A DNA stretch of 64,000 nt from Octopus sinensis (GCF_006345805.1 NC_043009.1:55924001-55988000); one strand, 5' to 3'. Positions 1 to 36,490 are shown, counted from the first letter of the stretch. Notes: a model not told the origin generated them from the letters alone. Program-made: numbers and translations.

Positions 1-225
1 TTCATATATAATGAGTTGATCGATCATGCCATCAGTTTTGATGATTTCAGGCTGGCTTTCAAACGATTGTTTTCTAGTGTATTAGCACTTGGTATGCATC
101 CATATTTGATGTGCAATTCGGTTTTTCTCAAATTGCATGCAGTGCTTAACAAGCAGAGACCTCTATTTAATTTTATTGACTGTAAGATGCTATCCGTTTT
201 TAATGTTAATATACAACTACTTAAA

Positions 226-419
226 GGCAGCGAGCTGGCAGAAACGTTAGCACGCTGGGCGAAATTCTTAGCGGTATTTCGTCTGTCTTTATGTTCTGAG
301 TTCAAATTTCGCCGAGGTCGGCTTTGCCTTTCGTCCTTTCGGGGTCGATAAATTAAGTACCAGTTGCGTCCTAAGGTCGATCTAAGTGACTGGCCCCTCC
401 CCCAAAATTTCAGGCCTTG

Positions 420-437
<18 letters not shown>
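226..437 (+). mobile_element. tRNA-derived SINE, family 1 (GGCGGCGAGCTGGCAGAA head)
   Basis: A-box and B-box (GAGTTCAAATT) head. More than 15 related copies occur in the window. It resembles Octopus OR-type SINEs, from memory and unverified. Confidence 0.85.
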
Positions 438-1300
<863 letters not shown>

Positions 1301-1307
1301 TTTTTAA

Positions 1308-1576
1308 AGGTGTAAACATTTTTTCACGCTAAGAGTTGCTGAAGCATGGAACAAACTGCCGGCATCAGTTGTTAGTTGTCGGAGCACTCCATCCTTCAAA
1401 ATTTCCATGCTTCTTGAGATTCGCCAAAACTGCACCTGATTTTCTCCCTCCATACACACGCAAGCATGTGTCTGACTCATACACTCTTCACTTCCCAGAC
1501 ATTTGTACATTACTGCATATGCTTTATACGCACTTTTGACATATTGTGGTGCAGCTGAGCACTGTATACAATAATT

Positions 1577-1644
<68 letters not shown>

Positions 1645-1645
1645 G
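1308..1645 (+). mobile_element. CR1/L2-type LINE 3' end with (ATT)n tail
   Basis: Encodes HFFTLRVAEAWNKLPASVVSCRSTPSFK, the typical CR1 ORF2 C-terminus, followed by a 3' UTR and an ATT tail. Confidence 0.75.
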
Positions 1646-2526
1646 TTCAGTAGTTTTATTTTTATAGCGTGCTTTCACTTCACTACCGAGCGCAGCTCTG
1701 TGTGCCTTGGGTATGTGCTGTGATTTGTTGTGATGCTCTGATGGTTATTGTATGGAAAGTGTTCTGCGTAGGATGTGTGCAGTACCTAGTAGTGCAATTT
1801 TCTGTATGTTATATGTGTTTGTAAGTCCTGGTGTTTTTGTTATGTATTTGTCTGGATATTTTTTTATCATGCCTAATGCACCTACTATGATAGGAATTGT
1901 TTCTGTTTTCAGATTCCACATTCTGGTTACCTCTATTTCAAGGTCTTTGTATTTTGAGAGTTTCTCCATTTCTTTTAGAGACACGTTGTCATCTGCCGGT
2001 ATTGATACATCAATTGGAAAGCATTTTTTTCTTCATGATCTCTGACAACTATATCTGGTCTGTTGGCCTTAATTTCTCTATCTGTGTGTATCGGCATATC
2101 CCAGAGTATGGTTGCTTTCTCGTTTTCTGTGACCTTTTCTGATGTGTGCCTATACCATCTTTTTTCTGTTGTTATTCCATAATGTTGGCATAGCTTCCAA
2201 TGTATGTAGGTTCCAACTCTGTCATGTCTGTGAATATATTCCTTCTTAGCCAGGACTGGGCAGCTAGAGATAATATGATTTATTGTTTCTTGTCCATCTC
2301 CACATATTCTGCAGTTACTTGTTATATTTCTTTTCATTACATGTTTTTGGTAATTTCTGGTGGGGAGGCTTTGGTCTTGTGCTGCAATTAAAAATCCCTA
2401 TGTTTCTGCTTTGAGTCCTGAGCTTCTCAACCATTGCTGGGATTTTTCTTTGTCTATTTCTTTTGCGTTTAGTTTAGTGCAGTATTTACCATGAAGGGGC
2501 TTTTCTTGCCATCGTTTTATCATGGT
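1646..2526 (-). mobile_element. 5'-truncated R4/Dong-type non-LTR retrotransposon (CCHC zinc knuckle plus restriction-like endonuclease)
   Basis: ORFs 1975..2337 and 1745..1984 contain CRICG..ETINHIISSC, RHD, RPDIVV and KLSKYKDL. Both ends are flanked by (TAA)n. Confidence 0.88.
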
Positions 2527-2922
2527 TCGTTATTATTATTATTATTATTATGATAGTATCTGCTGATTTAAAAGGCTACTATAATTCTACTGCAATGCAA
2601 TTCTTCCGTTATTTAACATTCTCTAAAAATGTATAAACTTTCAGAAGCTACCAATATTTTCTGTGCTATTTTAAGACTTGTTGTTGTGCTTCGTTTAATT
2701 ATTAGAATGTATTCATTCTTCAGTGAATGGCTCCTTTAAAGATAATTGGAGTCCAGCATTGGAAACTTCACAGAGAAAAATTTCTTGGAAATTACTTATA
2801 TCTGCTAATGACTTGTTAAACTATGCAAATATTGACTTAATCTCCCTTTAATTATATTTCTACAATCTCTCCGCTTCCAAACACGCTCGCAACCACACAC
2901 TCTCACACACACACTCTCTCTT

Positions 2923-2960
<38 letters not shown>

Positions 2961-3097
2961 TCACGAACACACACACGATTGTCAATAATTGAGTAAGAAG
3001 ACAGAATCATAGAGATCAGAACTACGCCAACAAAGTTATCAATATCTTTATCGAAGGTAAACAAGCAACATAAAATCTTTATTAATGATATACTTAC

Positions 3098-3350
3098 CGA
3101 TATCAGTAACCACGCCAGTAGCAGTAATTGTTTCAGGTTTCTGTTTAAATATGAAGTTTGCAAGCCATATTAAGTATACACCAATATCTATGAGACCGCT
3201 CCTGTGCAAGGAAGCCTCTGGCACAGCACCATTTGAAAGCATTATTTTATAAAACATAGTCGCATCTAAGTGGCGTATTTTTCCTATGGTTCCAGAGTCA
3301 ATTATTTCTCTAATGGCTTTGTAAACTGGGAAGAATTTGGTCCACATACC
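3098..3350 (-). CDS. DHDH: DHDH-like copy A, coding exon 4 (GMWTKFFPVY...SGLIDIGVY...KPETITATGVVTDI). Exons 5-7 are not found in the window.
   Basis: TTTCAG acceptor, G|GTAAGT donor, 253 bp. Lies inside ORF 3048..3374. Matches AIWTRFFP...GALLDIGIY...QKPEKIS. Confidence 0.92.
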
Positions 3351-3404: not shown

Positions 3405-3613
3405 TTCAAGATTTGGTACAAGGCCAGCAATTTCGGGGTAGGAGATAAGTCGATTACATCGATCCCAGTACTCAACTGGAACTTATGTTATTGGCCCCGG
3501 AACGATGAAAGGCAAAGTCGACCTCGGCAGAATTTGAACTTAGAACGTAAGGTCGGACGAAATGCTGCGAGGCATTTCGACCGGCGTGCTTCCGATTCTG
3601 CCAGCTCGCTGCC
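3405..3613 (-). mobile_element. SINE family 1
   Basis: Reverse complement of the family 1 consensus. Confidence 0.85.
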
Positions 3614-4076
3614 TTATAACAAAGAAATAATATCAAAACAGGAAATAAAATTGAGAAGAGATGGGAATGAAATAGTTATAAAAAGTTAAGAAGAACGACA
3701 TTATAAGTATATATTTTAGTCACTTTCCTTTAGGTTATTCTGTGTCATGATTTTCAATATTTTACCATTATCTTCCGTACCTTTGTATCTATTAAATCCA
3801 CTGTACAAACTTTCTTTCACTTATCAATGTTTTTTCTAATAAAATACTAAATATATTAATCTAATTCAGCTCATAGCACGAAGAGTAATTTCATTAGTCC
3901 CTTTATTTATTACTTAAGATCCAATTCAGAGTATCACAACTCTACTAAGTCTGAACAGTGATCCTTTAAATATATTTTGTTTTCATTGTTTACATACTCA
4001 TTCTTATTCTCTACTGCTATCCTTTCTGCACCGATATTTGTAAAATACTAAGGACAATCTTAGCCCCGCTGCGTAA

Positions 4077-4296
4077 GGCGGCGAGTTGGCAGAATCGTTA
4101 GCACGCCGGATAAAATATTTAATGGCTTTTAACCATCCTTTACGTTCTGAGTTCAAATTTCGCCGAGGTCAACTTTACCTTTCATCTTTCGGGATCGATA
4201 AATTAAGCACGAAGTACCAGTCAAACCCTGGGGTTCGATGTAATCGACTAGCCCCATACTCCAAAGTTTCAAACCTTGTGCATATTGTAGAAAAGA
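4077..4296 (+). mobile_element. SINE family 1
   Basis: Family 1 head and body. Confidence 0.85.
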
Positions 4297-4975
4297 ATAT
4301 TATCCACTCTGTGTAGTTATCTTTCATATCACTTTCCACTCAATGTCCAACTCTCTCTATAAACAAATGTTAGAACATACATCTCATTTTCTTCTTTGGT
4401 GTAGAGCTCAGCTCCAAACATCAGAATTTATTTCGCCACTCAATATGACGATATACCAACATACCAAATAAAGAGCCTTTATGTAAAGGGTTCTCAACCC
4501 CCCAAAAATGCATTTTAGAGTTCCAAGGGAAGAAGGTGAATTGGGACAGATATTGGCTTCACATGTTGGCACAAGGCCAGTAATATCGTGGAGGGGGTCA
4601 AGTCAATTACATCGACCCCAGTACTCAACTGGTACTTATTTTATCGACCCCAAAAGGATGAAAGATAATTTCATCTGAATTCTGAATTTGAATTCAGAAC
4701 GTAAGAAATGCTACTTCGCATGTTGCGCTAATTATTGTACCAATTCGCCTTGGACTAATATTCAGTAAAGAATAGTATCCTATAGATAACCTATCTTTTT
4801 AAGAAACAGAAATAACATCTGATGAGGAAATCTTGATAACAACATCTCTGAAAAAAAAAGCCAGATTTTTCCCGGCGGGACAGATTTTGACCAAGGATCA
4901 TCTTGATTAGTGATGATGTAGAGTTAAAGAACATTAGACGACCAAAATACTTTATTTCAATATTAAAAGTCATAC

Positions 4976-5139
4976 CTCCATGAAAAATAATTTCTTTGAC
5001 TTTGCGAGTTCAATCATTTCTTCTGTCTGCTGAGTGTTATTAGCACAAGTTTGCTCACACAGAACAGGTTTGCCATTGTTAAGCATGAGAATGGAAAGAG
5101 GATGATGGTAAAAATTGATTGCTGAAACGTACACCAGAT
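4976..5139 (-). CDS. DHDH: DHDH-like copy A, coding exon 3 (DLVYVSAINFYHHPLSILMLNNGKPVLCEQTCANNTQQTEEMIELAKSKKLFFME)
   Basis: CACAG acceptor, GAG|GTATG donor, 164 bp, phase 1/0. Homologous to the GKAVLCEKP...LFLME region of DHDH. Confidence 0.92.
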
Positions 5140-5732: not shown

Positions 5733-5844
5733 CTATGTTGGGATCTTTAGCAAATTCTTCGTAGCTGTCATACACATTCGGTATCTTAAACTTCTCTGCA
5801 AATTTCTTAGCCTTCTCTAAAGATTTGGATACCACCGCAGTTAT
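5733..5844 (-). CDS. DHDH: DHDH-like copy A, coding exon 2 (ITAVVSKSLEKAKKFAEKFKIPNVYDSYEEFAKDPNI)
   Basis: TTCAG acceptor, G|GTACT donor, 112 bp, phase 0/1. Matches DHDH [25 protein letters not shown]. Too short for the ORF track. Confidence 0.92.
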
Positions 5845-8211: not shown

Positions 8212-8295
8212 TGTGTGTTCTGAAGGATTCAAACATTGCAAAGCATTGCAGAAGTCGTTTGCAATCAAACCTGGCGAACATATTCCCCAGCGCAT
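8212..8295 (-). CDS. DHDH: DHDH-like copy A, coding exon 1 (MRWGICSPGLIANDFCNALQCLNPSEHT)
   Basis: ATG at 8295 and phase-0 donor GTAAGC at 8211. The peptide matches the DHDH N-terminal Rossmann strand (LRWGIVSVGLISSDF...SEH). Same 84-bp length as copy B exon 1. Confidence 0.9.
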
Positions 8296-11541: not shown

Positions 11542-11620
<79 letters not shown>

Positions 11621-15116: not shown

Positions 15117-15195
<79 letters not shown>

Positions 15196-15419
15196 AAGAT
15201 TATATATACACATACACATACACATATACATGCACACATACATACACATACACATATACATATACATATACATACACAGGCAGACACATAGATAGATATA
15301 TACATACATACATACATACATACATACATACATACATACATACATAGAGAGATACATAGACAGCCAGCCAGCCAGACAGACAGACAGACAGACAGACAAA
15401 TAAATGGAGTTAAACACCG

Positions 15420-16793: not shown

Positions 16794-16909
16794 TTACAAA
16801 GGGGTTGTCTTTATCTGATGAGTTTCTTCAAGTTGTCGTCGAACCTCATCAATAACTTTTATAATTGACAAAGTATCAGAATGAGTGTGAGCAGGACATT
16901 CTAATTGAC
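16794..16909 (-). CDS. DHDH: DHDH-like copy B, last coding exon 7 (GQLECPAHTHSDTLSIIKVIDEVRRQLEETHQIKTTPL*)
   Basis: TTAAAG acceptor and TAA stop. Matches G.KESP...ES..LADILEEVRKAIG. The spliced CDS is 333 aa with all phases consistent. Confidence 0.88.
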
Positions 16910-17184
16910 CTTTAAAAGCAGAAGAGAGAAATGTAAAAAGAGAATTCTCGGAGTATAAACATTTTGACACAAAAAAGAAAAAGAGAGTAAAATATTTCAA
17001 TTATGCAATGAGAACACATTGAATAAAATATTGATGAATTTTACTTTGTTCGCAAAGTATTACTCCAAGCAATAGAAGTGGTAGATAATCAAATTATGAG
17101 CCACAGTATTAGTAGTAGCTTCAACAGTTATCGAAATATATGGAAGCACGCTTATATAAGCGACAGTATTTATCAAAGACTTAC

Positions 17185-17335
17185 CTTTCTCAAAACACTG
17201 GCGAACAGCTTCAGCCTCATAAGCTAATCCAGCGCTATTGGGGTAATAATACTTAGCATCAGATTTGGGGAGTGGAAATTCTCTTTCTTCTCCATTCACC
17301 TCGATTTTGGTGGGAGACCAAAATGGTCCGGGTAT
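17185..17335 (-). CDS. DHDH: DHDH-like copy B, coding exon 6 (IPGPFWSPTKIEVNGEEREFPLPKSDAKYYYPNSAGLAYEAEAVRQCFEK)
   Basis: AACAG acceptor, G|GTAAGT donor, 151 bp. Matches [21 protein letters not shown]...NGAGMSYEAKHVWECLRKG. Confidence 0.93.
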
Positions 17336-17594
17336 CTGTTGACATAGGAGTGTATGGTATATACGTTAAGACAGTTTGGTTTAATTTCTTGACTATTAAC
17401 GTTATATATGTTGGAGTTTGTACAATAATTTCATTCATAAAGAAATTAAATAAATACTTATAATTCTTCTCTAAATGTTCTTTTTTATCTGGGAAATCTA
17501 AATAATAGTCATAATAATAAAACTTCAATTGTCGGTTAACTAACTACAAGTATAATTTTAAAATTATTTATTTTTAAATGAAATGATTACTTAC

Positions 17595-17719
17595 ATAAAT
17601 TTTACCTTTACTTCCATAAATATATACGTCTCGTCTTCCTTCTATATCAAGATTATAAAACAAAGATGCTCTAGCACCATCCTTATAAGTCAGAATAATA
17701 TTGGCAGATTGATCGACAC
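17595..17719 (-). CDS. DHDH: DHDH-like copy B, coding exon 5 (GVDQSANIILTYKDGARASLFYNLDIEGRRDVYIYGSKGKIY)
   Basis: GAAAG acceptor, TAT|GTAAGT donor, 125 bp, phase 1/0. Matches GVDDTVTVLLQYPG...GTKG. Confidence 0.9.
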
Positions 17720-18222
17720 CTTTCCAAAATGAAACAAAAACACATTTCTTAGTTTTCCTTTTTACTCGGGTTGGTAAACAGTTTTTATTAATACAAGTTT
17801 ATCTGTGTTGAAAAAAATAATGAGTCTTTAAACTAAATTATTTTTATCCTAAAGCTTTATTTGCATAGGTTTCAGTCTTAATTGTGAGCGGTTTTAAATT
17901 CTCGCTCCTATCTTACAACATCTAACCGGCACTCTAATGTTCTCTGTTTGCTTTACTTTCATTAGCGAATATTTTCGTTCTGTAGTAACTTCCTTTTCTC
18001 TTCACTTATTCTAAGCGCTTTGGAAGCAAAAATATGCTTTAAATTATTCATGACATAAAAGGGCGCATGCTCCTCTTTACTAATTACCGTATGTAGATGT
18101 ATATCATTCCCTCCCCCTCTCTCGCATGACTCTTTTTTTCTATTACGTTATAGCTCACAAAATTATTGAAACCTCCATGGAGGCACTTAAGCAACACAAA
18201 ACTTTATTAAAGATATACTCAC

Positions 18223-18472
18223 CTGTATCAGCAATCGTTCCAACGGCAGTAATTGTCTTCGGTTCCTCTCTAAATATGAATCTTGAAAGCCATATTTGAT
18301 ACACAGAAGAACACAAGAGGCCTCCTCCACCCAAAGAATGCTGAGATACAATGTCTAATGAAAAGGTATCAAAAAAGAAAGCTGCATCCATGTGGCGTAT
18401 CTGTCCTATGGTTCCAGAGTCAATTATTTCTCTTAGAGCTTTATAAGCTGGGGAGAAGTTGGACCACAAAGC
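18223..18472 (-). CDS. DHDH: DHDH-like copy B, coding exon 4 (ALWSNFSPAYKALREIIDSGTIG...GGGGLLCSSVY...EEPKTITAVGTIADT)
   Basis: CCTTAG acceptor, G|GTGAG donor, 250 bp. Lies inside ORF 18155..18469. Confidence 0.92.
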
Positions 18473-19230
18473 CTAAGGAGAAAGCATTTATGTTGAAAAA
18501 AAGAAAGAATGTTTAAAGTGAGGAATAAGAATGAAAGAAAGGAACTTATGTATAAAAAGATACAAGCGAATGTTGAAAGAAATATTATAAAAGACCAGCT
18601 TATTTCTGTTATTTTTCATCATGTTATTCTGTGTTGCGATCTTTAATATTATACCACTACGTTCCTCACCTCTGTTTCTATCAAATCCGCTGTACGGCCT
18701 TTCAAAACACTTGCCAAGTTTCACAGATAAGGCACATTACTAAACGTATAATTCTATTTTACCTCTTGTTATAAATCTATTATAAATTTATAATTTCAAA
18801 TCCAATTAAGACCAATACGCCTAATACGGGAAACTACTTTTATTGCCTTCTTTTCTTACATTCTTTTTTTTGTCTTGTTTTTATTTTGTCTTCTGACATT
18901 TAATGTTCTTCTATCGTCAATGCAACGATATTTTATTAAGTCCTTAGTACAACCTTCTACTATCACCATTTCTTTACCAACCAGTTACATCTACAAAAAA
19001 TTTTAGAATATTCTTTAAATTTATTCTTCAATGAAGGTATTATTTCAAGTGTTCCACTTTACTTCATCGCCCGATGTTATCATATGCTAACGTCGTAGTT
19101 TTCTATGATAGGGGTTCTAACCTGGGTTAGAAAGAAAGGGAAATTGCGACGAATATTCAATAAATTATGATGACATTAGATTATGTATACATTGTAGCTT
19201 GCAGCTTGTTTATTATTTAATCTATTGAAA

Positions 19231-20025
19231 GGCGGCGAGCTGGCAGAATCGTTAGCACGCCGGGCGAAATGCGTAGCCGTATTTCGTCTGCATTACGTTC
19301 TGAGTTCAAATTCCTCCGAGGTCGACTATGCCTTTCATCCTTTCGGAGTCGATAAATTAAATACCTATTTCTTTATTACCCACAAGGGGCTAAACATAGA
19401 GGGGACAGACAAGGACAGACATAGGTATTAAGTCGATTACAACGACCCCAGTGCGGAACAGGTACTTAATTTATCGACCCCGAAAGGATGAAAGGCAAAG
19501 TCAACCTCGGCGGAATTTGAACTCAGAACGTAACGACAGACGAAATACCGCTAAGCATTTCATCCGGCGTGCTAACGTTTCTGCCAGCTCGCCGCCTTCA
19601 AAAAATTAAATTAAATACCAGTTACGCACTGGGGTCGATATAATCGACTTAATCCGTTTGTCTGTCCTTGTTTGTCCTCTCTGTGTTTAACCCCTTGTGG
19701 ATAGTAAAGAAATAGGTATTTCGTCTGCCGCTACGTTCTGAGTTCAAATTCCGCTGAGGTCGACTTTGCCTTTTATCCTTTCGGGGTCGATTAAATAAGT
19801 ACCAGTTACGTTTGTCTGTCCTTGTTTGTCCTTTCTGTGTTTAGTCCATTGTGGGTAGTAAAGAAATAGGTTTTTCGTCTTTCTTACGTTCAAATTCTGC
19901 TGAGGTCGATTTTGCCCTTCATCCTTTCGGGGTCTATAAATTAAGTACTAGTTGCGTAGTGGGATCAATCTAATCGACTAGCCCCTACTCCAGAATTTCG
20001 GGCCTTGTGCTTAGAATAGAAACGA
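19231..20025. mobile_element. Nested cluster of family 1 SINEs: a + copy interrupted by a - copy (~19367-19598), followed by 5'-truncated tandem copies
   Basis: The duplication AAATTAAATACC flanks the inverted insertion. Three consecutive body/tail units lie at 19610-20025. Confidence 0.85.
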
Positions 20026-20279
20026 TTATTTAATCTATTATATTCAATATATCTCATCAATAGGAAATCTATAGAAATAATCTAAGAAGTGAACACATCG
20101 CAATACTAACACGTGGCAAGACACAATATTGACTTGTAAACATTTAATGTACTTGGTAGTATAATATAGTTGCCAAAGGAAATACTTTCCTTGTCAGCAA
20201 TTAATATATATGTACTAGTTGCCAGGAATATATTTAATATGTAAATTCTCCCACCCAGTTGCGTTACACCGTTAAACGT

Positions 20280-20625
20280 CTGAGACCCCTTTCGGTCACG
20301 ACACAGACCATGGGATTGCACCTAGAAAGTTAGGTACTCCCAGGCACAAGCCCGGGCAAGGTTGTTTATGGAAGACCACCAGTCGCCCATGCATACCAGC
20401 CTCCCCTCTCCACGCCACCAGTATTATCCAAGGGAAAGGCAAAGGCCGATACAGCTTGGCACCTGTGACATCGCAACTCATTTCTACAGCTGAGTGAACT
20501 GGAGCAACGTGAAATAAAGTGTCTTGCTCAAGACAAGAGCACAACACACAGCCCGGTTCAGGATTCGAGCTCACAACCTCACGATCGTAAGCTCGACACT
20601 CTAACCACTGAGCCATGCGCCTTCC
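20280..20625 (-). mobile_element. tRNA-derived SINE, family 4 (CORE/V-like CTTGAGCAAGACACTT block)
   Basis: A and B boxes, with a 14-bp TSD ACACCGTTAAACGT at 20266-20279 and 20626-20639. Confidence 0.85.
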
Positions 20626-20929
20626 ACACCGTTAAACGTAATGGGTATTTAAGTTATGTGTTCGTGGATAGTGGATGTGGTACTGATGAAAACGCAATAA
20701 TTCCTGCAATTTGCATATACGCTTATCACCTATTTCTTCGATCGCTCCGTTGTAGTACTGGCTCTGAATTCTATAGGAAATCTACGAGTGTAGAGAACAA
20801 CTTAAAAGATTTTATTGAATATCTCTGATTACACATAACAATAAATATTTGTTTTCAATTAGTAAATATTCCTTTTATAATTATTTTTTTTTTATTTTTC
20901 TTTCATTCAAAGATTTAGATTTTTGAGCC

Positions 20930-21420
20930 GATCATGTGCGTTAAAAATTATCCATATACCTAACGTGGATTTATGTCATCTCTAAAGTGGTAGGAAAGAC
21001 ATAATATGTTATTTATGGAAAAGTTGTATCAACTAATTAGATGAAAACTAGAAATTTAAAGCAACATGTGAAGAACGACCATCCTAAACATCAGGACAAA
21101 ATATGTTTCGAATGTCATGTGAATACTTTAAAAAATGTGAAGCTGGATTCAAAAGAGCCATTCTAAGAGATGAACCAAAAGCTTTTAGAAAGTTTCTGTC
21201 ATAACATAAAAGAGGCAAGATAAAATACAAACTGCATACAAATAGGGGAAAATATAATTAAGTTTTTTTTTTTTTTTTCAAAATGGAATTTGTGTTTGGA
21301 AATGTCAGAAAGAACAATATAATGTATTGCTTTCAGTTGTGTCAACATATCTTTGTGGAGAAGATTTCCAAACCAGTTGCAAATGAAAATGAAGTAAACG
21401 GGAGGTTAAAATTGAATGCA
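20930..21420 (+). mobile_element. Degraded hAT (Charlie/ZBED-like) transposase fragment
   Basis: Encodes LKQHVKNDHPKHQDK...LKNVKLD...NQKLLES...IGENII, the pattern of the Charlie N-terminus. Confidence 0.55.
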
Positions 21421-21466
21421 TTGTTACCTTTTAAGCATTTCACCATATAGCCATGAAACGACAAAG

Positions 21467-22297
21467 GGATCTTTTCCTTTTGAACGGCAGTTTTTAACAT
21501 AATTTCTAGGTAACTAAAAAGTTTTAAACTTCGTATACTGGTAGAATGTGTTTATAAAACATCATTTTCTCTTGGCTTTATTGAGAAAATTCTATAGGTT
21601 GTAACATATTTCGTCTTTAATTTCTTGCATTTCGGCAATTTTAACCAATCACTGATGTCCATTTAGGTAAACAACGTTCTGTGCCGCATGAATATGTCCC
21701 TCCTTTAAGAAACAGATTGGGTTTATTTACATTTGTGAAGAAAAAAGATACCCTTCCCCCACCCCTAACCCTAACCCTAACTAAACCTAACTCTAACCCT
21801 AAATCTAAAATAGATTGAAATGCAATAGATCGATACTAGAGTTATAATTATGGTGACAATTTCATACGACACCGCTATAAAATCTTAGCGGTGTCGTATG
21901 AAATTTTCACCCATAATTATAACCCTAGTATCGATCTATTGCATTTCAATCTATTTTAGATTTAGGGTTAGAGTTAGATTTAGTTAGGGTTAGGGTTAGG
22001 GGTGGGGGAAGGGTATCTTTTTTCTTCACAAATGTAAATAAACCCAATCTGTTTCTTAAACGAGGGACATATTCATTATGCACAGAATGTTATTTACGTC
22101 AATGGAGGTAATTGATTGGTTAAAATTGCCGAAATGCAAGAAATTTTAGACGAAATATGTTACAACCTATAGAATTTTCTCAATAAAGCCAAGAGAAAAT
22201 GATGTTTTATAAACACATTCTACCAGTATACGAAGTTTAAAACTTTTTAGTTACCTAGAAATTATGTTACAAACTGCCGTTCAAAAGGAAAAGTTCC
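21467..22297. mobile_element. 831-bp foldback (arm-only) non-autonomous TIR element, Merlin-like termini, with internal (CCCTAA)n
   Basis: Arms of ~411 bp with an 8-nt spacer (21878-21885). Termini GGATC...GTTCC. Exact 8-bp TSD CGACAAAG at 21459-21466 and 22298-22305. The superfamily is inferred from the GG termini and 8-bp TSD. Confidence 0.85.
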
Positions 22298-22707
22298 CGA
22301 CAAAGAAACAAGCACAGCTTTCTTATTGGCTAGAATCTATCTTAGAAAAATCATTTATAATGTCCTAGAATACTTTGGAATACTTGTTAATTTGTAGTTA
22401 AAAGTAGTGAGTGGAATTTTGAAATAGAGTGAAAAAAATCACGAGGGGAAATAGTTGAGAACCATCCTTTTACATTGTTCCTCAGCCTGCTAGAAAGGGA
22501 AACTAAATCGTGCAAGATAACACCTCAGTACCTTAAGATAGGTAAGATATACCAGATAATGTTGTATCAGATAAAACCATCTCTGAGGGGGAAAAGAGAT
22601 GATCAAGACCAGAATGTTTTAGATTATGGATCCCCTTTATTAGGGCTGATGTGTATTCAAGAACAGCAACGTGCCAAAATGCACAATTTTAGAGTTAAAA
22701 GACATAC

Positions 22708-22871
22708 CTCCATGAAAAATAATTTCTTTGATTTTGCAAGTTCAATCATTTCTTCTGTCTGCTTCGTATTACAAGCACAGGGTTTCTCACATAGAACTGG
22801 TTTACCATTATTCAGCATAAGAATAGAAAGAGGATGATGGAAAATGTTGGCCGTTGAAAGGTACACAAGAT
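22708..22871 (-). CDS. DHDH: DHDH-like copy B, coding exon 3 (DLVYLSTANIFHHPLSILMLNNGKPVLCEKPCACNTKQTEEMIELAKSKKLFFME)
   Basis: CATAG acceptor, GAG|GTATG donor, 164 bp. Contains the canonical CEKP motif of Gfo/Idh/MocA enzymes. Confidence 0.94.
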
Positions 22872-22997
22872 CTATGAGTAAAACGAAATTATATTAGTTT
22901 TCTTTGCTATCAAAGTAATGCATTTGTGTAATTCAAGTGTGATATATAGAAATAATTGTTTAATATTTACACTTGTCTATCTTGCGTGTGCGTGTAT

Positions 22998-23866
22998 AAG
23001 ATGGGGTGCCGAAAATTTGTTGGATTTGGGTAAAAATAAAAAATACAGGAGAATCAGTTAATTATGATTTTATTCAACACTAGCAGTATCGCCCGGCGTT
23101 GCTCGGGTTTGTAAGGGAAATAACTATATAAGCATTTTTAGAGAGTTATAGCAAAAAATAGCAAAAAAATAGCAAAAAAATGCATTAAAAATGAAATAAA
23201 AAATGATGGTAATTTTTTTTAAATCGTTGACTCATCGTAGACATTTTTAGAGAGTTACTTCCCTTATATAATAGCGAAAAAATGCATTAAAATGGAAAAA
23301 ATGATGGTAAATTTTTTTTTTAATCGTAGACTCATGTAGACGCTTTCTTAGCCATTTCTGTTTTGGTGTCTTCAAGCCATGAAGTCGTTGTTCTAAAAGA
23401 ACGCTGGTCTCCTTGACAACGCATTACGACGTTGATTTCCTTACACTCCCTTCCCCACAGGTGCAGGTGTGAGCGTGGACGCCAACTCCGCCGCCATCGA
23501 CACACGAAAAATTATGCATTAAAATGGAATAAAAATGATGTTAAATTATTTTTAAAATCGTTAACTCATCGTAGACGCGCGCTAATAGCCAGACGGGCTC
23601 GATATGAATCACGACTATAAGATACCCGAATTTGGTTAAACTGCACCGCAAAATGTGGGAGTAGTTAGGAATCTAAATCGAAGGGGACAGACACTCACAC
23701 AACTACAGTTTTATATATATAGATATCCTTCTCTCAAATTCACACACGTATTGCAGCAGACCGTCAGTTTTTATAAGTTCTGTAAAAGAAATCGGAAGGT
23801 TGGGCCTCCAACCAAGCCATTCATGACACCCTTAAAACTAGAAACTTTTCAGCACCGCTTCGTATG
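22998..23866. mobile_element. Mariner-derived non-autonomous element split by a Helitron
   Basis: Degenerate TIRs GGGGTGCCGAAAATT and AAACTTTTCAGCACCGCTTCGTA. Confidence 0.5.
23080..23723 (-). mobile_element. Non-autonomous Helitron
   Basis: A|TCTATATATA 5' end, CCCGAGCAACGCCGGG hairpin plus CTAG|T 3' end, no TSD. Confidence 0.85.
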
Positions 23867-24285
23867 TGTGCATATATTTTAAGTGAACAATTAATTTCTT
23901 TAACTTTACGCGAATAGTTGTCATATCTATTCATATTCTATTATCGTTAGAATCATTATTGTTCACGATGATAATGCTTTTTATCGTCTTATTGAAATTT
24001 CATGTTTATTTCTCTTATTTGGAAGGAGGTGAACACAGCTATCCGGATTCTTTTTGATCCAGTGTCATCTCGTTCATGTGTTACAACATGAACGAGTTGA
24101 ACTTATCACGAACTATACATTTCTTGGTCTATTTTTTGTCGTACAGTACAAGACATTATAGTAACAGTTGTTAAAATTGAGTTTGTTTAAGACCAAAATG
24201 AAATGAAATAAATTAAAAGACCTACAATGTTTACAAAATAACATACAAAATTTACAATTGGATTTAGGCTAAATATTTTTCATAC

Positions 24286-24397
24286 CTATGTTGGGATCTT
24301 TGGCAAATTCTTCATAGCTGGTATACACATTTGGTATTTTAAATTCATCGGATAGTTTCTTAGCTTTCTCTAAAGATTTGGATACCACTGCAGTTAT
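24286..24397 (-). CDS. DHDH: DHDH-like copy B, coding exon 2 (ITAVVSKSLEKAKKLSDEFKIPNVYTSYEEFAKDPNI)
   Basis: TTTAG acceptor, G|GTATG donor, 112 bp. 32/37 aa identical to copy A exon 2. Confidence 0.93.
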
Positions 24398-26228
24398 CTA
24401 AATGAAAAGCAAAATAATGTCATGTGCAACTGAGTTTTATTGTGCAGTATATGTAATTGCAATGTTGATAGTTATATAATTTTAATGTTTGATGAATGCA
24501 AATAAATAAGGCTTTCTTAATCGACTGTTACTAACTTCTTAGACATGAGGCAGGCGATTTTGAGATGAGGGTGGTAGTTGATTACATCGATCTTTACACT
24601 TTATTGGTTGTGTAATTTATCGACTACAAAAAGGATGAAATGCTAATTAGTCCTCAGCAAGATTTAAACTCAGAACCGAAACAGCCGGAAGCAGTACCGC
24701 TAGGTATATCTGTGACGTTCTAATGATTCCGCCAATTCATTTTTCTTAGAAATAATTGTCTCTGACATAGCCAAAAGGTTTGAAATTTGGTGGAACAAAA
24801 ATAATGGAATATATCAATCCCGCCCAGTACTACTTAACTGGTACTATATGTTGCAGAACCCGGGGATGAACGTCAAATTTGACCTTGTCATGATTTGAAC
24901 TTAGAATATAAAGAGCACAAACTAAATACTGACACTCTTGGGAATCTTCAAATCAGTCGTCATCCTCACTATTATTATTATTAGGGCGACGAAGTGGTAG
25001 AATCGTTAGAGCCCCGTGGTATTTCTTCCGACTCCTTGCGTTCTGAGTTCAAATTCCGTGTTTCACTTTTTTAGGGATGATGAAATCAAGTACCAGTCAA
25101 GTACTGGAGCAGATGGTACAGGCTAAGCCTCCACCTGTCAATATTACTTGACTTGTGCCTAAATCAGAAACCATGGTAGTGAAAATCCTTCGCGGTATTT
25201 CTTCTTGATATTTACATCCTAAGTTTAATTCCAAATGCCAGTCATCTTTTAGGGGTCGACAAGATAAAATAAGTGTCAAGTACTGACTTGCCTTCTCCCA
25301 TAACAATTGTTGGCCTTGTGCCTATATTTGAAGCCTCAACTATTATTAGTATTACCATTATAATAATATTATTCTGCTTCTGGCTGTCTTTATTCGTATT
25401 ACGCTTAGGTCATCAAGAGAATTTGTAACTCGAATGTAGAAATATATAAATATAGTAAAAAGAGAGGAAGGGGACAAAGAAACGGGAATCAGTGAAAAAA
25501 TAGAAAGAGGAAACACGAAAGAGAGACAGTGGGGTGAGATAGAAAGTCTATATCACTACAGACAGTGATAGGTAGGTAGGTAGGTAGGTAGGTAGGTAGA
25601 TAGATTTGCAACAATACAAGTTCAAACGCTCAGTTTTGTCTTTTTCTTAACACCATTGTACCTAATGTGTTAACGAAAATAGGAAATAAAATTACGAAAA
25701 GATAAATGTATGTTTTAAAGACCGTCTTTTATAGTATGAATTATTCTTTGTTACACTCGGACCTTTCTATGTATATTATTATTTCTTTTTCGTGTTATGT
25801 TGTCTTCTAAAACTTGAACTATATTTGTGGTGATCCAATTTTTGAATTCCTTGCGTTATCTTCTGTTATTGACGTATTCCTAAAGATTTAAAGTTTACCA
25901 TAAATGTTTGTTTATTGTTCAGCAGTTATACTTTTTAAAATATCCTCTTTCAAAACGAAAGTTTAGCCGCTATTTCATAAAGTTAAACGTTTTAAACATT
26001 GGACGATACGCTGAATGTTTTCCTAAATACTTTTTAAAATCCTTCTATCCATGTCTAACCCGTCCATTTCTGGCATTATAGAGTTTAGTGCTCTATATAG
26101 AATACTTTTCGTCATAGGTTTGCCCCGGTTAAAGTTTGTAGTGGTAAATAATAAAGAAATTGTGAGAAATTTAAGAAGTTAAAAATGAATAAAATAAAGA
26201 GAGACAAACGTGAAATGTTATTACTTAC

Positions 26229-26312
26229 TTTGTGTTCTGAAGGATTCAGACATTGCAAAGCATTGCAGAAATCCGTTGCAATCATACCTGCCGAACAGAG
26301 TCCCCAGCACAT
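26229..26312 (-). CDS. DHDH: DHDH-like copy B, coding exon 1 (MCWGLCSAGMIATDFCNALQCLNPSEHK)
   Basis: ATG at 26312, donor GTAAGT at 26228, 84 bp. Paralogous to 8212-8295. Confidence 0.92.
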
Positions 26313-26800
26313 TTTCCCACCTTTTGAAATGTGTTAACAAAATGTCGCAAATTTCTAATCCTCTTCTCCGTAGATGTTACACTACTTTTGGCTGTTTAGC
26401 TACTAGATCTCCTTGAAATATATATGACGATAAAAGTAGCAAGAACTATTATTAGCTGAGAGAGAGAGAGAGGGGGGGGAGATAGAGGGGAGAATTGCGA
26501 GAGTGGGAGAAAGAAGGAACAGAATCGCAAATGGTGTCGAAAGGAGAATCAACATGCTTTTGTGAAACATGTGTGTAAATGCAGGCGAAATAACATTAAC
26601 ATTCTTAGCCACAGAATTCAAAATATCAAAAAGCGATAAAGTTATTCTACACTTATCAAAAGAAAATATGACCTATGTAGATATGTACAAAACATACATT
26701 TGTTAATTTTTTTTTCTTCCACGATAAACCCACTGAACTGATTTCCCGCTGCATTGTCTCACTTTTTGAAATACCCAAACGAAATAAACATGTTTTGAAA

Positions 26801-27527: not shown

Positions 27528-27758
27528 ATTTCTTTACTGCCCACAAGGGGCTAAACATAGAGGGGACAAACAAGGACAGACGAAGGGATTGAGTCGATTA
27601 CATCGCCCCCAGTGCGAAACTGGTACTTTATTTTATCGACCCCGAAAGGATGAAAGGCAAAGTTGACCTCGGCGGAATTTGAACTCAGAACGTAACGACA
27701 GACGAAATACCGCTAAGCATTTCACCCGGCGTGCTAACGTGTCTGCCAGCTCGCCGCC
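27528..27758 (-). mobile_element. SINE family 1 with TSD
   Basis: 17-bp TSD TATGTGTTGGTAAAATA on both sides. Confidence 0.9.
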
Positions 27759-27987
27759 TATGTGTTGGTAAAATAAGCTGCTTATAAGTTTTATGTCACG
27801 TATAGTGAAAAATAGCGCAGTTGGGTTACAGGTTGTCTCACGAACTTGTCACTGATTCACTACATACCTTAGTTCGGTTATGACAAAAGAGTGTCTGTGA
27901 CAGAATCTAGAGCAAATACGAAAAGGGACAATTTAGAAAAAGCAGCGTTCTTTTATACATCTTGCCTATGTTTACAAGTTTTCATAA

Positions 27988-28215: not shown

Positions 28216-28220
28216 TCACT

Positions 28221-29290
<1,070 letters not shown>

Positions 29291-30342: not shown

Positions 30343-30650
30343 AAATGATTTTTGCTTGGGGTGTGCTTGCTTATATAAAGATCCAGAAGGATAGATATAT
30401 CATTGAGAACAATAGATTTTGTTGGTGGTCTTGTTATCTCTATTCTAGCTTTTGGTGAAGTAGAAGAGGTTAGAAAGGGTCAAGTGGTGAAGACATTATT
30501 TCGGCCTAGCTAAAGGCATCTGGAAAATGTAAAACTGCTGTCAGAGAAAATCCATTGTTCCATCGTGGGAAAAGTTCTGTTGCAGTATTAATTTAAATTT
30601 GGTTATGGTGGATCGAATCCACTTCATGCATGCAACATTCACTACAGACG
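30343..30650 (-). promoter_or_regulatory. Putative core and proximal promoter of DHDH copy B (TATA at 30377-30370, Inr TCATTT at 30348-30343)
   Basis: TATATAAG lies 31 nt upstream of the Inr A (30346), the same spacing as in copy A. A candidate donor C|GTGAGT follows at ~30322. Confidence 0.6.
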
Positions 30651-30679
30651 TATTTTTTGTTTACATTCTATTTGAAAAA

Positions 30680-30870
30680 TATTTCTCTAAGGGCTTTGTT
30701 AGCAGGAAAGAAGTTGGAATATAAAGCCTGAAAGAATAGCATTTATGTGAAAGAAAAATAAAGAAATAAAGATAATCGTAATATCATAATTTTTTTCAAT
30801 TTCAAATTCAACTAAGACTATTATCACTAATACTGGGAACTTCTTATATATTTTTTCTTACATTCTGCCA
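30680..30870 (-). pseudogene. DHDH-like remnant D: 5' part of exon 4 (ALYSNFFPANKALREI, then a stop) plus upstream intron-3 sequence
   Basis: TTCTTTCAG acceptor at 30730-30728. The exon piece 30727-30680 aligns to copy B exon 4. 30795-30870 aligns to B intron 3 near 18790-18865. Confidence 0.75.
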
Positions 30871-36249: not shown

Positions 36250-36490
36250 TAACTGTCGACACTTTATTAGTGTATTTCAAAGGCGAAACAACGCGCTGGG
36301 GACTATGTTCGGCAAGTTTAATTGCAAACGATTTCTGCAATGCTTTGCACTGTTTAAAACCTTCAGAACATGAAATAAATAATGACTTTTTTCCTTTCAT
36401 ATTTACCTATCAATTTTTAATTTTATTAAGTGACGCAGTGACATTTTTAATTTCATTTCTTCTGTATTTGCAATTAAGAGCTTCAACCGC
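36250..36490 (+). pseudogene. DHDH-like remnant C: inverted exon 1 (36291-36374) with flanking sequence
   Basis: Reads TRWGLCSASLIANDFCNALHCLKPSEHE. ATG is ACG, the donor GT is AT (ATAAAT), and the Rossmann Gly is Ser. Intron-1 homology runs to CTTCAACCGCT at ~36490. No further exons were found. Confidence 0.85.

What the first reader, a model, noticed from the sequence alone, without database searches (positions are those of the whole stretch)
5048..5056. DHDH copy A has lost the invariant EKP lysine (CEKP -> CEQT)
Seen: codons GAG CAA ACT in an otherwise intact, frame-preserving exon, whereas copy B keeps GAG AAA CCC. Established: the EKP motif is the most conserved motif of Gfo/Idh/MocA enzymes, and Lys97 of mammalian DHDH is an active-site residue (numbering from memory). 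A keeps the His79, Asp176 and Tyr180 equivalents. Inference: A is a pseudoenzyme or has altered chemistry. Cephalopods are known to recruit enzymes as non-catalytic proteins (GST-derived S-crystallins, ALDH-derived omega-crystallin).
Basis: partly seen in the sequence, partly recalled or inferred. Interest (0 to 1): 0.7.

Follow-up and report, generated by a model that had tools for sequence, protein, structure and literature searches.

The report
Octopus DHDH paralogue lacking catalytic lysine
One of many tandem copies of a sugar/dihydrodiol dehydrogenase gene in the octopus genome really has swapped its near-invariant catalytic lysine for glutamine. The change is old, shared between species and sits in an intact annotated gene, so this is a plausible but unproven "dead enzyme" and not an error or a plain pseudogene.

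Summary
Window 5048-5056 (minus strand) reads GAG CAA ACT (Glu-Gln-Thr), where monkey DHDH has Glu96-Lys97-Pro98.

The window is Octopus sinensis chromosome CM016871.1. Copy A is exons 1-4 of RefSeq gene LOC115218668 isoform X1 (UniProt A0A6P7T245, 337 aa). Exons 5-7 lie just beyond the window start, so the gene is not truncated.

The same three codons occur in a second O. sinensis A-type copy and in the O. bimaculoides orthologue. Sequencing error is excluded, and the change predates the species split.

Lys occupies this position in 294 of 302 other family members, and none has Gln. Only K to Q is special: every other octopus paralogue reads EKT, and copy B's EKP is derived. Copy B itself has Cys at the Asp176 position.

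Selection is mixed. Between species omega is about 0.3 and frameshifts are avoided. After a recent triplication in the O. sinensis lineage, copy A gained 8 replacement and 0 silent changes.

The product is listed in an octopus ink proteome, but that hit is not paralogue-resolved.

Best reading: a retained, catalytically impaired DHDH-like protein. Nothing supports a crystallin-like role. Interest is modest.

The parts
5048..5056 (-). Codons GAG CAA ACT = Glu94-Gln95-Thr96 of copy A, equivalent to Glu96-Lys97-Pro98 of monkey DHDH. Gln95 is the CAA at 5053..5051.
8212..8295 (-). Copy A exon 1 (ATG at 8295; MRWGICSPGLIANDFCNALQCLNPSEHT; Gly-rich Rossmann loop with Pro8 where the other paralogues have Ala). 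Donor GTAAGC.
5733..5844 (-). Copy A exon 2 (ITAVVSK...KDPNI, plus the first base of Asp66). Acceptor cag, donor GT.
4976..5139 (-). Copy A exon 3, carrying His77 (5107..5105, equivalent to His79) and the EQT motif. Acceptor cag, donor GTATGA.
3098..3350 (-). Copy A exon 4, carrying Trp123, the variable substrate loop (residues ~146-170), Asp175 (3188..3186) and Tyr179 (3176..3174). Donor GTAAGT. It has one extra codon relative to the other copies.
1..3097 (-). First ~3.1 kb of copy A intron 4. It is collinear with the 3.7-kb intron 4 of the O. bimaculoides orthologue up to the window edge, so exons 5-7 should lie ~1.6 kb and more beyond window position 1.
16794..26312 (-). Copy B, a complete 7-exon gene: exons 26312-26229, 24397-24286, 22871-22708, 18472-18223, 17719-17595, 17335-17185 and 16909-16797, followed by TAA. 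Its translation is identical to XP_036364279/80 (P0148, 333 aa).
22780..22788 (-). Copy B motif GAG AAA CCC (E-K-P). The Pro codon is derived from the octopus-wide ACC (Thr).
18311..18313 (-). Copy B has Cys174 at the position of catalytic Asp176 (GGGGLLCSSVY).

Best explanation
[quoted passage not shown] I call its lineage 'A-type'. A single A-to-C change (AAA to CAA) replaced the catalytic Lys of the E-K-P/T motif with Gln in the A-type ancestor. This happened before O. sinensis and O. bimaculoides split. SHOWN: the substitution is real and shared by three loci in two species. The reading frame and splice sites are kept. The fold domains, Gly-rich loop, Glu96, His79, Asp176, Tyr180, Trp125 and Trp254 equivalents are kept. 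The lineage shows purifying selection between species. INFERRED: in this family the Lys amine contacts the reacting substrate oxygen, and its replacement abolishes activity in relatives. The A-type protein has therefore most likely lost, or greatly weakened, the canonical NADP-dependent hydride-transfer activity. It probably still folds, dimerises and binds NADP(H). That would make it a pseudoenzyme, or at best a weak enzyme, kept for a non-catalytic role such as pairing with active paralogues or binding a ligand or cofactor. After a recent triplication of the B-A gene pair in the O. sinensis lineage, the copies, including this one, have been under relaxed or diversifying selection. That signal is concentrated in the substrate-loop half. 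The confidence given applies to the pseudoenzyme reading; the descriptive part (real, old, full-length, annotated gene) I hold at about 0.95.
For: Codons and reading frame. Identity of the gene: window exons 1-4 equal residues 1-204 of A0A6P7T245 / LOC115218668 X1, whose sequence is printed in Suppl. File S1 of PMC10142993. The window equals O. sinensis CM016871.1. Not truncated: intron 4 is collinear with the orthologue; the orthologue has exons 5-7; and the RefSeq C-terminus differs from the A2 and A3 copies, so it comes from copy A's own exons. Family membership and residue mapping: 2o48 at E=8e-66; Pfam PF01408 at 72 bits and PF22725 at 71 bits. Lys invariance: 154/157 and 140/145, with Glu 157/157 and 145/145. 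Role of the Lys: in a family member K106 hydrogen-bonds the reacting oxygen, and K106A loses activity (PMC5969746). Age: the A clade has 100% bootstrap support with members from both species. Constraint: the between-species path has 12 replacement and 10 silent changes, omega about 0.32, p=0.009 against neutrality. Exons 5-7 give omega of about 0.3-0.35. There is one in-frame indel in 903 nt of exon, against about 7.8 expected from the intron gap rate, p=0.004. Precedent: GFOD1 is a described pseudoenzyme of the same family (PMC11612644). Expression hint: A0A6P7T245 is a master protein in an O. vulgaris ink proteome, with 3 peptides and 4 spectrum matches, in 2 of 3 samples.
Against: No activity, cofactor-binding or tissue-expression data exist for this protein. 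Pairwise omega for exons 2-4 (window A against O. bimaculoides A) is 0.76 and cannot be told from 1. It is significantly higher than the 0.10 of a canonical orthologue pair (Fisher p=0.002). The copy-A branch has 8 replacement and 0 silent changes, and the sister copy A3 has a 1-bp deletion and Tyr179Asn. All of this also fits early decay. If ambiguous sites are counted as replacements, the between-species test weakens to p=0.056. The ink-proteome identification can be explained by peptides shared with other paralogues. The role of Lys97 in DHDH itself is taken from memory of the DHDH literature, which I could not read here. Mutagenesis in DHDH emphasised His79 and Tyr180, both of which copy A keeps.
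Confidence: 0.5

Rival explanations
1. A redundant duplicate in early decay. The A-type copies, or at least the three O. sinensis copies, are drifting towards pseudogenes. K97Q is simply a tolerated loss-of-function hit in a family with at least 9 members.
For: Omega for exons 2-4 is 0.76, not different from 1. The A1 branch has 8 replacement and 0 silent changes, and the A3 branch 7 and 0 plus a frameshift and Tyr179Asn. Relic exons of further copies lie in the window. No A-type protein turned up in the large protein database apart from the O. bimaculoides models.
Against: The ORF is open over 337 codons with canonical splice sites. There is a deficit of indels against introns (p=0.004). Between-species omega is about 0.32 (p=0.009), and exons 5-7 give about 0.3. 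Gln has been kept since before the species split without a disabling mutation in A1, A2 or the O. bimaculoides copy. The sequence distance to the other paralogues (dS about 0.5) is far too large for an unconstrained sequence to keep an open frame.
Confidence: 0.25
2. Still an active oxidoreductase with altered chemistry or substrate. His79, Asp176 and Tyr180 carry catalysis, while Gln95 only retunes substrate or cofactor positioning.
For: All other catalytic and pocket residues that can be checked are retained. Replacement changes cluster in the substrate loop, residues ~146-170, and 15 replacement against 0 silent unambiguous changes on the A1 and A3 branches (p=0.03 against neutral) could reflect selection for new specificity. 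Other family positions such as Asp176 vary naturally in constrained paralogues. Clade B0 has Cys there, with omega of 0.18.
Against: The Lys is present in 97% of 302 relatives, and none has Gln. Replacing it by Ala abolishes activity in a relative (PMC5969746). The few natural non-Lys members usually also lack Asp176, which looks like degeneration. The excess of replacement changes is not significant by the pairwise count (19 against 2, p=0.16).
Confidence: 0.2
3. RNA editing masks the genomic change. A-to-I editing of the middle A of CAA (window 5052) would recode Gln95 to Arg and restore a basic side chain.
For: Only general knowledge, from memory, that coleoid cephalopods recode very many codons by A-to-I editing. 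Nothing here is specific to this site.
Against: No data were examined. Only a small percentage of coding adenosines are edited, mostly in neural tissue and mostly at low levels. Arg is not seen at this position in any of 302 relatives.
Confidence: 0.02
4. Crystallin-like recruitment as an abundant structural or refractive protein.
For: None found. It rests only on the analogy with S- and omega-crystallins.
Against: Full-text searches pairing octopus or cephalopod terms with DHDH names found only the ink proteome list. There the protein is a low-abundance hit (4 spectrum matches) among ordinary cytosolic enzymes.
Confidence: 0.02
5. Sequencing or assembly error at 5053.
For: None.
Against: The identical GAG CAA ACT occurs in window A1, in O. 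sinensis A3 (L008) and in O. bimaculoides (L004), which is an independent assembly.
Confidence: 0.005

Closest known systems
Mammalian dimeric dihydrodiol dehydrogenase / D-xylose 1-dehydrogenase / 1,5-anhydro-D-fructose reductase (DHDH; PDB 2o48, 2o4u, 2poq, 3ohs)
   Same: Alignment is end to end (323 residues, E=8e-66). It has the same two Pfam domains and the same length class. The His79, Glu96, Trp125, Asp176, Tyr180 and Trp254 equivalents are all present.
   Different: Lys97 is Gln and Pro98 is Thr, the latter shared with all octopus paralogues. The Gly-rich loop has Pro8. The substrate loop (DHDH 148-170) is unrelated in sequence. It is one of at least 9 tandem paralogues rather than a single-copy gene.
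[quoted passage not shown]
   Same: A member of the same family in which the GxxVxCEKP consensus is degenerate and a non-catalytic role is proposed. The dimeric fold is retained.
   Different: GFOD1 (CDRT) has lost the Glu as well as cofactor-binding residues, and does not bind NAD(P). Copy A keeps Glu94 and the Gly-rich loop, so cofactor binding is probably retained. GFOD1 is an ancient vertebrate-wide gene, whereas the A-type is a young octopus-lineage paralogue.
Inositol dehydrogenases / 1,5-anhydro-D-fructose reductase / KijD10-type ketoreductases (Lys-Asp-His/Tyr catalytic set)
   Same: The same E-K-P Lys, an Asp four residues before a His or Tyr, and the same fold. Lys-to-Ala loses activity in scyllo-inositol dehydrogenase (PMC5969746).
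   Different: Only distantly related in sequence (E of 1e-11 to 1e-16). Copy A lacks the Lys.
Other octopus DHDH paralogues with non-canonical catalytic residues (clades B and B0: Asp176 to Cys; P0016: Lys97 to Ala plus Asp176 to Asn)
   Same: The same tandem family and the same genomes, with loss of one member of the catalytic set in an otherwise intact ORF.
   Different: A different residue is lost. Clade B0 is under clear purifying selection (omega 0.18), whereas A-type constraint is weaker.

Membership tests
Gfo/Idh/MocA oxidoreductase family | N-terminal Rossmann NAD(P)-binding domain with a Gly-rich loop | tested here: met
   PF01408 at 72.2 bits (cut-off 24), residues 2-120. The loop is G4-I-C-S7-P8-G9-L-I-A12, aligned to DHDH G6..S14.
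Gfo/Idh/MocA oxidoreductase family | C-terminal alpha/beta substrate-binding and dimerisation domain | tested here: met
   PF22725 at 71.1 bits (cut-off 27), residues 130-245, on the full 337-aa product. Only residues up to 204 are encoded in the window.
Gfo/Idh/MocA oxidoreductase family | E-K-P motif with catalytic Lys | tested here: not met
   The motif is E-Q-T. Glu is kept and Lys is replaced by Gln.
Dimeric dihydrodiol dehydrogenase (DHDH) subfamily | Closest solved relative is DHDH, with full-length collinear alignment | tested here: met
   2o48 at E=8.4e-66; the next hit is at 4.8e-30. The protein groups with animal DHDH proteins in searches.
Dimeric dihydrodiol dehydrogenase (DHDH) subfamily | His79, Asp176 and Tyr180 equivalents | tested here: met
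   His77, Asp175 and Tyr179.
Dimeric dihydrodiol dehydrogenase (DHDH) subfamily | NADP+-dependent oxidation of trans-dihydrodiols or D-xylose, or reduction of 1,5-anhydro-D-fructose | not testable with these tools
   Needs recombinant protein.
Pseudoenzyme | Homologue of an active enzyme lacking a residue required for catalysis | tested here: met
   Lys97 to Gln. The Lys is present in 294 of 302 relatives, and Lys-to-Ala is inactive in a relative (PMC5969746).
Pseudoenzyme | Maintained by selection as a protein | tested here: inconclusive
   Between-species omega is about 0.32 (p=0.009, or 0.056 on the conservative count), with an indel deficit (p=0.004). However, pairwise omega for exons 2-4 is 0.76, and the A1 branch has 8 replacement and 0 silent changes.
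Pseudoenzyme | Expressed as a protein | tested here: inconclusive
   There is a RefSeq coding model. It is a master protein in the ink proteome, but peptide sets shared with other paralogues can explain the reported 9% coverage.
Pseudoenzyme | Demonstrated lack of catalytic activity | not testable with these tools
   No assay data exist.
Unprocessed pseudogene | Frameshift, premature stop or broken splice site | tested here: not met
   Exons 1-4 are open with GT-AG at all junctions. The RefSeq product runs to 337 aa. The sister copy A3 does carry a 1-bp deletion.
Taxon-specific crystallin | Very high expression in the lens or other optical tissue | not tested
   No expression data are available. 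Literature searches found nothing.

The most novel reading that the evidence does not exclude
The A-type DHDH is a neofunctionalised, non-catalytic NADP(H)- or ligand-binding protein, possibly a regulatory partner that heterodimerises with active paralogues. Its former substrate loop would be under diversifying selection: unambiguous changes on the two young O. sinensis copies are 15 replacement and 0 silent. It would be produced in the ink gland. That would make it a young, datable origin of a pseudoenzyme inside a cephalopod-specific enzyme expansion.
Probability: 0.12. Interest if true: 0.55.

Novelty: new member of a known kind. Interest (0 to 1): 0.33.

Why it matters
If copy A is a retained dead enzyme, it is a young and well-bracketed example of pseudoenzyme birth. 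One point mutation hit the most conserved catalytic residue. It became fixed before two octopus species split. It sits in a lineage-specific tandem expansion in which other members have independently changed other catalytic residues. That makes the family a tractable natural series for asking how catalytic sets erode or retune after duplication.

In practice, the databases name all these proteins 'trans-1,2-dihydrobenzene-1,2-diol dehydrogenase' and merge copies A and B as isoforms of one gene. Metabolic inferences for octopus from these annotations are therefore unsafe.

Catalytic-residue loss in redundant paralogues is common, and a pseudoenzyme in this family is already described. The surprise to a specialist is therefore limited.

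Tried and rejected
1. A homologue search with the 55-aa exon alone found nothing, which wasted one of three searches.

2. An unfiltered blastn of A against B was swamped by microsatellites. It was redone with dust masking and an offset filter.

3. Copy A exons 5-7 were sought in window 1-3095 by tblastn and tblastx and were absent. I first considered truncation. I rejected it once the orthologue's 3.7-kb intron 4 and the collinear intron alignment were seen.

4. I tried to fetch the 7.5 kb between the window start and locus L006 through neighbouring genes (P0150, P0007). Both turned out to be other copies further away.

6. I took the odd N-terminus of the O. bimaculoides model P0145 as possible loss of exon 1. 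I rejected this because a 6-kb run of N lies exactly where exon 1 is expected.

7. I took the peptide SGLIDIGVYLIWLANFIFK in the ink paper's Table 2 as direct mass-spectrometry evidence. I rejected this because that table comes from in-silico digestion. The observed-peptide sheet is cut in the stored file.

8. The '337-aa' rows that start at copy B's ATG looked like B-A chimeras. They are explained by NCBI merging A and B into one gene.

9. DHDH structural and mutagenesis papers were not in the searchable library.

10. I skipped structure prediction. The tool returns no coordinates, and the alignment to 2o48 already fixes the residue equivalences.

Full report
**Observation.** The plus strand at 5048-5056 reads agtttgctc. 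On the minus strand this is GAG CAA ACT, Glu-Gln-Thr.
- It lies inside a 164-nt exon (5139..4976) bounded by cag| and |gtatga.
- The exon reads (D)LVYVSAINFYHHPLSILMLNNGKPVLCEQTCANNTQQTEEMIELAKSKKLFFME.
- A tblastn of this peptide against the window finds one paralogous exon at 22872..22708, 84% identical, with CEKP.
- phmmer against PDB sequences aligns the exon to monkey dimeric dihydrodiol dehydrogenase 2o48. The Gln falls on Lys97 and the first His of YHHP on His79.
- The full-length alignment (E=8.4e-66, 323 residues) confirms this. It also puts Asp175 and Tyr179 on Asp176 and Tyr180, and Trp123 and Trp252 on Trp125 and Trp254.

**Gene models.**
- Copy A has four exons in the window, all with GT-AG junctions and an open frame of 613 nt: 8295-8212, 5844-5733, 5139-4976 and 3350-3098.
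- Copy B is a complete seven-exon gene (26312..16797 plus TAA). Its translation is identical to XP_036364279/XP_036364280 of Octopus sinensis (P0148).
- Window 6794-36312 is 100% identical to CM016871.1 of assembly GCA_006345805.1, so the window is O. sinensis chromosomal DNA.
- The supplementary protein table of an octopus ink proteome paper prints UniProt A0A6P7T245 (GN=LOC115218668, 'isoform X1', 337 aa). Its first 204 residues are identical to window exons 1-4, including CEQT (PMC10142993).
- Copy A is therefore an annotated RefSeq coding gene. NCBI merges it with copy B as isoforms of one locus, which explains the gene rows seen.

**Is copy A truncated?**
- Exons 5-7 are not in window 1-3097.
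- The O. bimaculoides orthologue (XP_052828214.1 = P0145, in one 90% cluster with P0009) has a 3.7-kb intron 4.
- The window's 3.1 kb downstream of exon 4 aligns collinearly with the first ~2.1 kb of that intron.
- Exon 5 is therefore expected about 1.6 kb beyond the window start.
- The C-terminus of the RefSeq product differs by one residue from copy A2 and by three from copy A3. It therefore derives from copy A's own, open, exons 5-7.
- I could not fetch that DNA.

**Not an error, and old.** A pattern scan of all fetched loci gives the following.
- Ten non-A octopus copies read GAG AAA ACC (E-K-T).
- Window copy B alone reads GAG AAA CCC (E-K-P).
- Three A-type loci read GAG CAA ACT: window A1, a second O. 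sinensis copy A3 in L008, and the O. bimaculoides gene in L004.
- The ancestral octopus motif is therefore E-K-T. The A-type change is a single AAA-to-CAA transversion plus a silent ACC-to-ACT change. Copy B's Pro is a derived return to the textbook motif.
- In a neighbour-joining tree the two A-type proteins form a 100%-supported clade, sister to the B clade at 71% support.
- Clades A, B0, D, E and F each contain O. sinensis and O. bimaculoides orthologues. The expansion and the K-to-Q change therefore predate that species split.

**How unusual is it?**
- In an alignment of copy A with 157 other sequences, the Glu is invariant. The Lys position holds Lys in 154. The exceptions are Gln in copy A and in P0145, and Ala in P0016, another O. 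sinensis paralogue that also has Asn at Asp176.
- Among the best 145 new representatives of 50%-identity clusters, from a search of 1.84 billion proteins, the position is Lys in 140, Ala in 3, Leu in 1 and Val in 1. None has Gln. Four of those five also lack Asp176.
- Loss of this Lys therefore recurs at a few per cent and tends to go with further degeneration.
- In the family the Lys amine hydrogen-bonds the reacting substrate oxygen, and K106A, D191A and H195A variants of scyllo-inositol dehydrogenase lose activity (PMC5969746).
- GFOD1 is a described pseudoenzyme of the same family with a degenerate CDRT motif (PMC11612644).
- The specific role of Lys97 in DHDH is from my memory of the monkey DHDH structure papers. 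I could not read them here.

**Genomic context.**
- O. sinensis carries at least nine DHDH-like genes, most of them in a tandem cluster spanning more than 200 kb of one chromosome. The O. sinensis B0 gene lies about 18 Mb away on the same chromosome.
- A B-type gene followed by an A-type gene forms a unit that is repeated at least three times: A1 in the window, A2 in L006/L008 and A3 in L008/L007.
- A3 has a 1-bp deletion in an A5 run in exon 4 and Tyr179Asn. It is either decaying or mis-assembled.
- O. sinensis and O. vulgaris A-type copies have lost the TAA stop (TTA), which adds LGGTESQ.
- The odd N-terminus of the O. bimaculoides model coincides with a 6-kb run of N where exon 1 should be. 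I read it as an assembly artefact, not loss of exon 1.

**Selection.** Nei-Gojobori counts gave these values.

| Comparison | Region | dS | dN | omega |
|---|---|---|---|---|
| A1 vs O. bimaculoides A | exons 2-4 | 0.074 | 0.056 | 0.76 (22.3 replacement, 7.7 silent) |
| A1 vs A3 | exons 2-4 | 0.019 | 0.047 | 2.5 (19 replacement, 2 silent) |
| O. bimaculoides A vs A2 / A3 | exons 5-7 | 0.078-0.085 | 0.026-0.028 | 0.30-0.35 |
| Control orthologues B0 (P0001 vs P0152) | full length | 0.139 | 0.025 | 0.18 |
| Control orthologues B0 (P0001 vs P0152) | exons 2-4 | 0.165 | 0.017 | 0.10 |

- The pairwise A value cannot be told from neutrality (p=0.50). It differs from the control (Fisher p=0.002).
- Polarising changes with three A-type sequences separates two phases.
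- On the path between O. bimaculoides A and the O. sinensis A ancestor there are 12 replacement and 10 silent changes. Omega is about 0.32, with p=0.009 against neutral, or p=0.056 if six ambiguous sites are all counted as replacements.
- After the O. sinensis duplications, A1 has 8 replacement and 0 silent changes, and A3 has 7 and 0, in exons 2-4.
- About half of all A1 against O. bimaculoides replacements fall in residues ~146-170. That stretch aligns to the DHDH loop carrying Phe154, Leu158 and Val161. Their role as pocket residues is from memory.
- Intron alignments show about 8-9% mismatches and 36 gap openings in 4185 nt. The 903 nt of exon comparable between species carry one in-frame 3-bp indel (Poisson p=0.004).
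- Protein identity between species is not exceptional for the family: A 90.7%, B0 94.8%, D 90.0%, E 82.7%, F 95.1%.
- My reading is that the Gln-bearing gene was maintained as a protein for most of its history. The recently multiplied O. sinensis copies, including the one in the window, are now under relaxed or diversifying selection.

**Expression.**
- The only protein-level report found is the O. vulgaris ink shotgun proteome. There A0A6P7T245 is a master protein with 3 peptides, 3 unique to the protein group, 4 spectrum matches and 9% coverage. It was found at high confidence in 2 of 3 samples, and it is the only DHDH-family entry among 361 proteins.
- The A-specific peptide printed in that paper's Table 2 comes from in-silico digestion.
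- The observed-peptide sheet is cut in the stored file.
- Enumeration shows that triples of peptides shared with other paralogues could also give 9% coverage.
- Translation of copy A is therefore suggested but not proven. No evidence connects it with the lens or any crystallin-like role.

**Verdict.**
- The comparison with copy B is misleading in two ways. Thr is ancestral, and copy B lacks Asp176.
- I commit to a retained, catalytically impaired DHDH-like protein (about 0.5). Early decay of a redundant copy (about 0.25) and an active enzyme with altered chemistry (about 0.2) are live rivals.
- It is a new member of a known kind. Interest is moderate to low.

Noticed in passing
window 18311-18313 (-), copy B exon 4: Copy B (and the whole B/B0 clade: P0001, P0003, P0147, P0148, P0152) has Cys where the family has catalytic Asp176 (GGGGLLCSSVY). 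Even so, the B0 orthologue pair is under clear purifying selection (omega 0.18). The 'normal' comparator is itself non-canonical.
   Followed up: partly
P0016 (O. sinensis, 353 aa); representatives P0170, P0236, P0247, P0272, P0277: A second, independent loss of the EKP lysine in octopus (CEAP, with Asp176 to Asn). About 3% of DHDH-like cluster representatives also lack the Lys (Ala, Leu or Val), and four of those five lack Asp176 too.
   Followed up: partly
L006:19088-19171; L008:2534-5677 and 18907-26553; L007:1504-1604: The B-type + A-type gene pair is tandemly repeated at least three times in O. sinensis. Copy A3 has a 1-bp deletion in an A5 run in exon 4, Tyr179 to Asn, and a duplicated exon 1.
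   Followed up: partly
window 36291-36377 (+): An orphan, inverted relic of a DHDH exon 1 (TRWGLCSASLIANDF...). ATG has become ACG, the loop Gly has become Ser, and there is no GT donor. A similar inverted exon 1 lies upstream of P0001 in O. bimaculoides (L001:1179-1078).
   Followed up: partly
window 30647-30742 (-): A relic of the start of a DHDH exon 4 (ALYSNFFPANKALREIFFK*) with an in-frame stop.
   Followed up: no
window 34311-35760 (-): Two overlapping ORFs (335 and 174 aa) of a pogo/Tigger-like DDE transposase (the source's annotation gives a weak PF03184 DDE_1 hit), apparently split by a frameshift.
   Followed up: no
window 28220-29282: A 1-kb (TA)n microsatellite (537 copies, GC 0.21). 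Shorter copies of the same kind of repeat lie at 842-971, 11566-11620 and 15118-15358.
   Followed up: no
window 217-440, 3446-3628, 4075-4301, 4600-4704, 19222-20030, 27592-27759: A short interspersed repeat (~150-180 bp, 80-88% identity, both orientations) is scattered through the introns of copies A and B.
   Followed up: no
L008:5553-5677, L007:1504-1628, L002:5538-5662 versus L004:31169-31272: The A-type stop codon TAA (O. bimaculoides) is TTA in O. sinensis and O. vulgaris. This extends the protein by LGGTESQ (329/330 to 336/337 aa).
   Followed up: yes
L004:12552-18520 (O. bimaculoides CM046613.1): A 6-kb run of N sits where the A-type exon 1 should be. The RefSeq model XP_052828214.1 instead starts with 42 unrelated residues, probably an annotation artefact.
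   Followed up: partly
L005 / L006 gene tables; LOC115218668: NCBI merges tandem paralogues A and B (and, elsewhere, other copies) as 'isoforms' of single genes. One isoform of B appears to use the last exon of the next B copy ~34 kb downstream.
   Followed up: no
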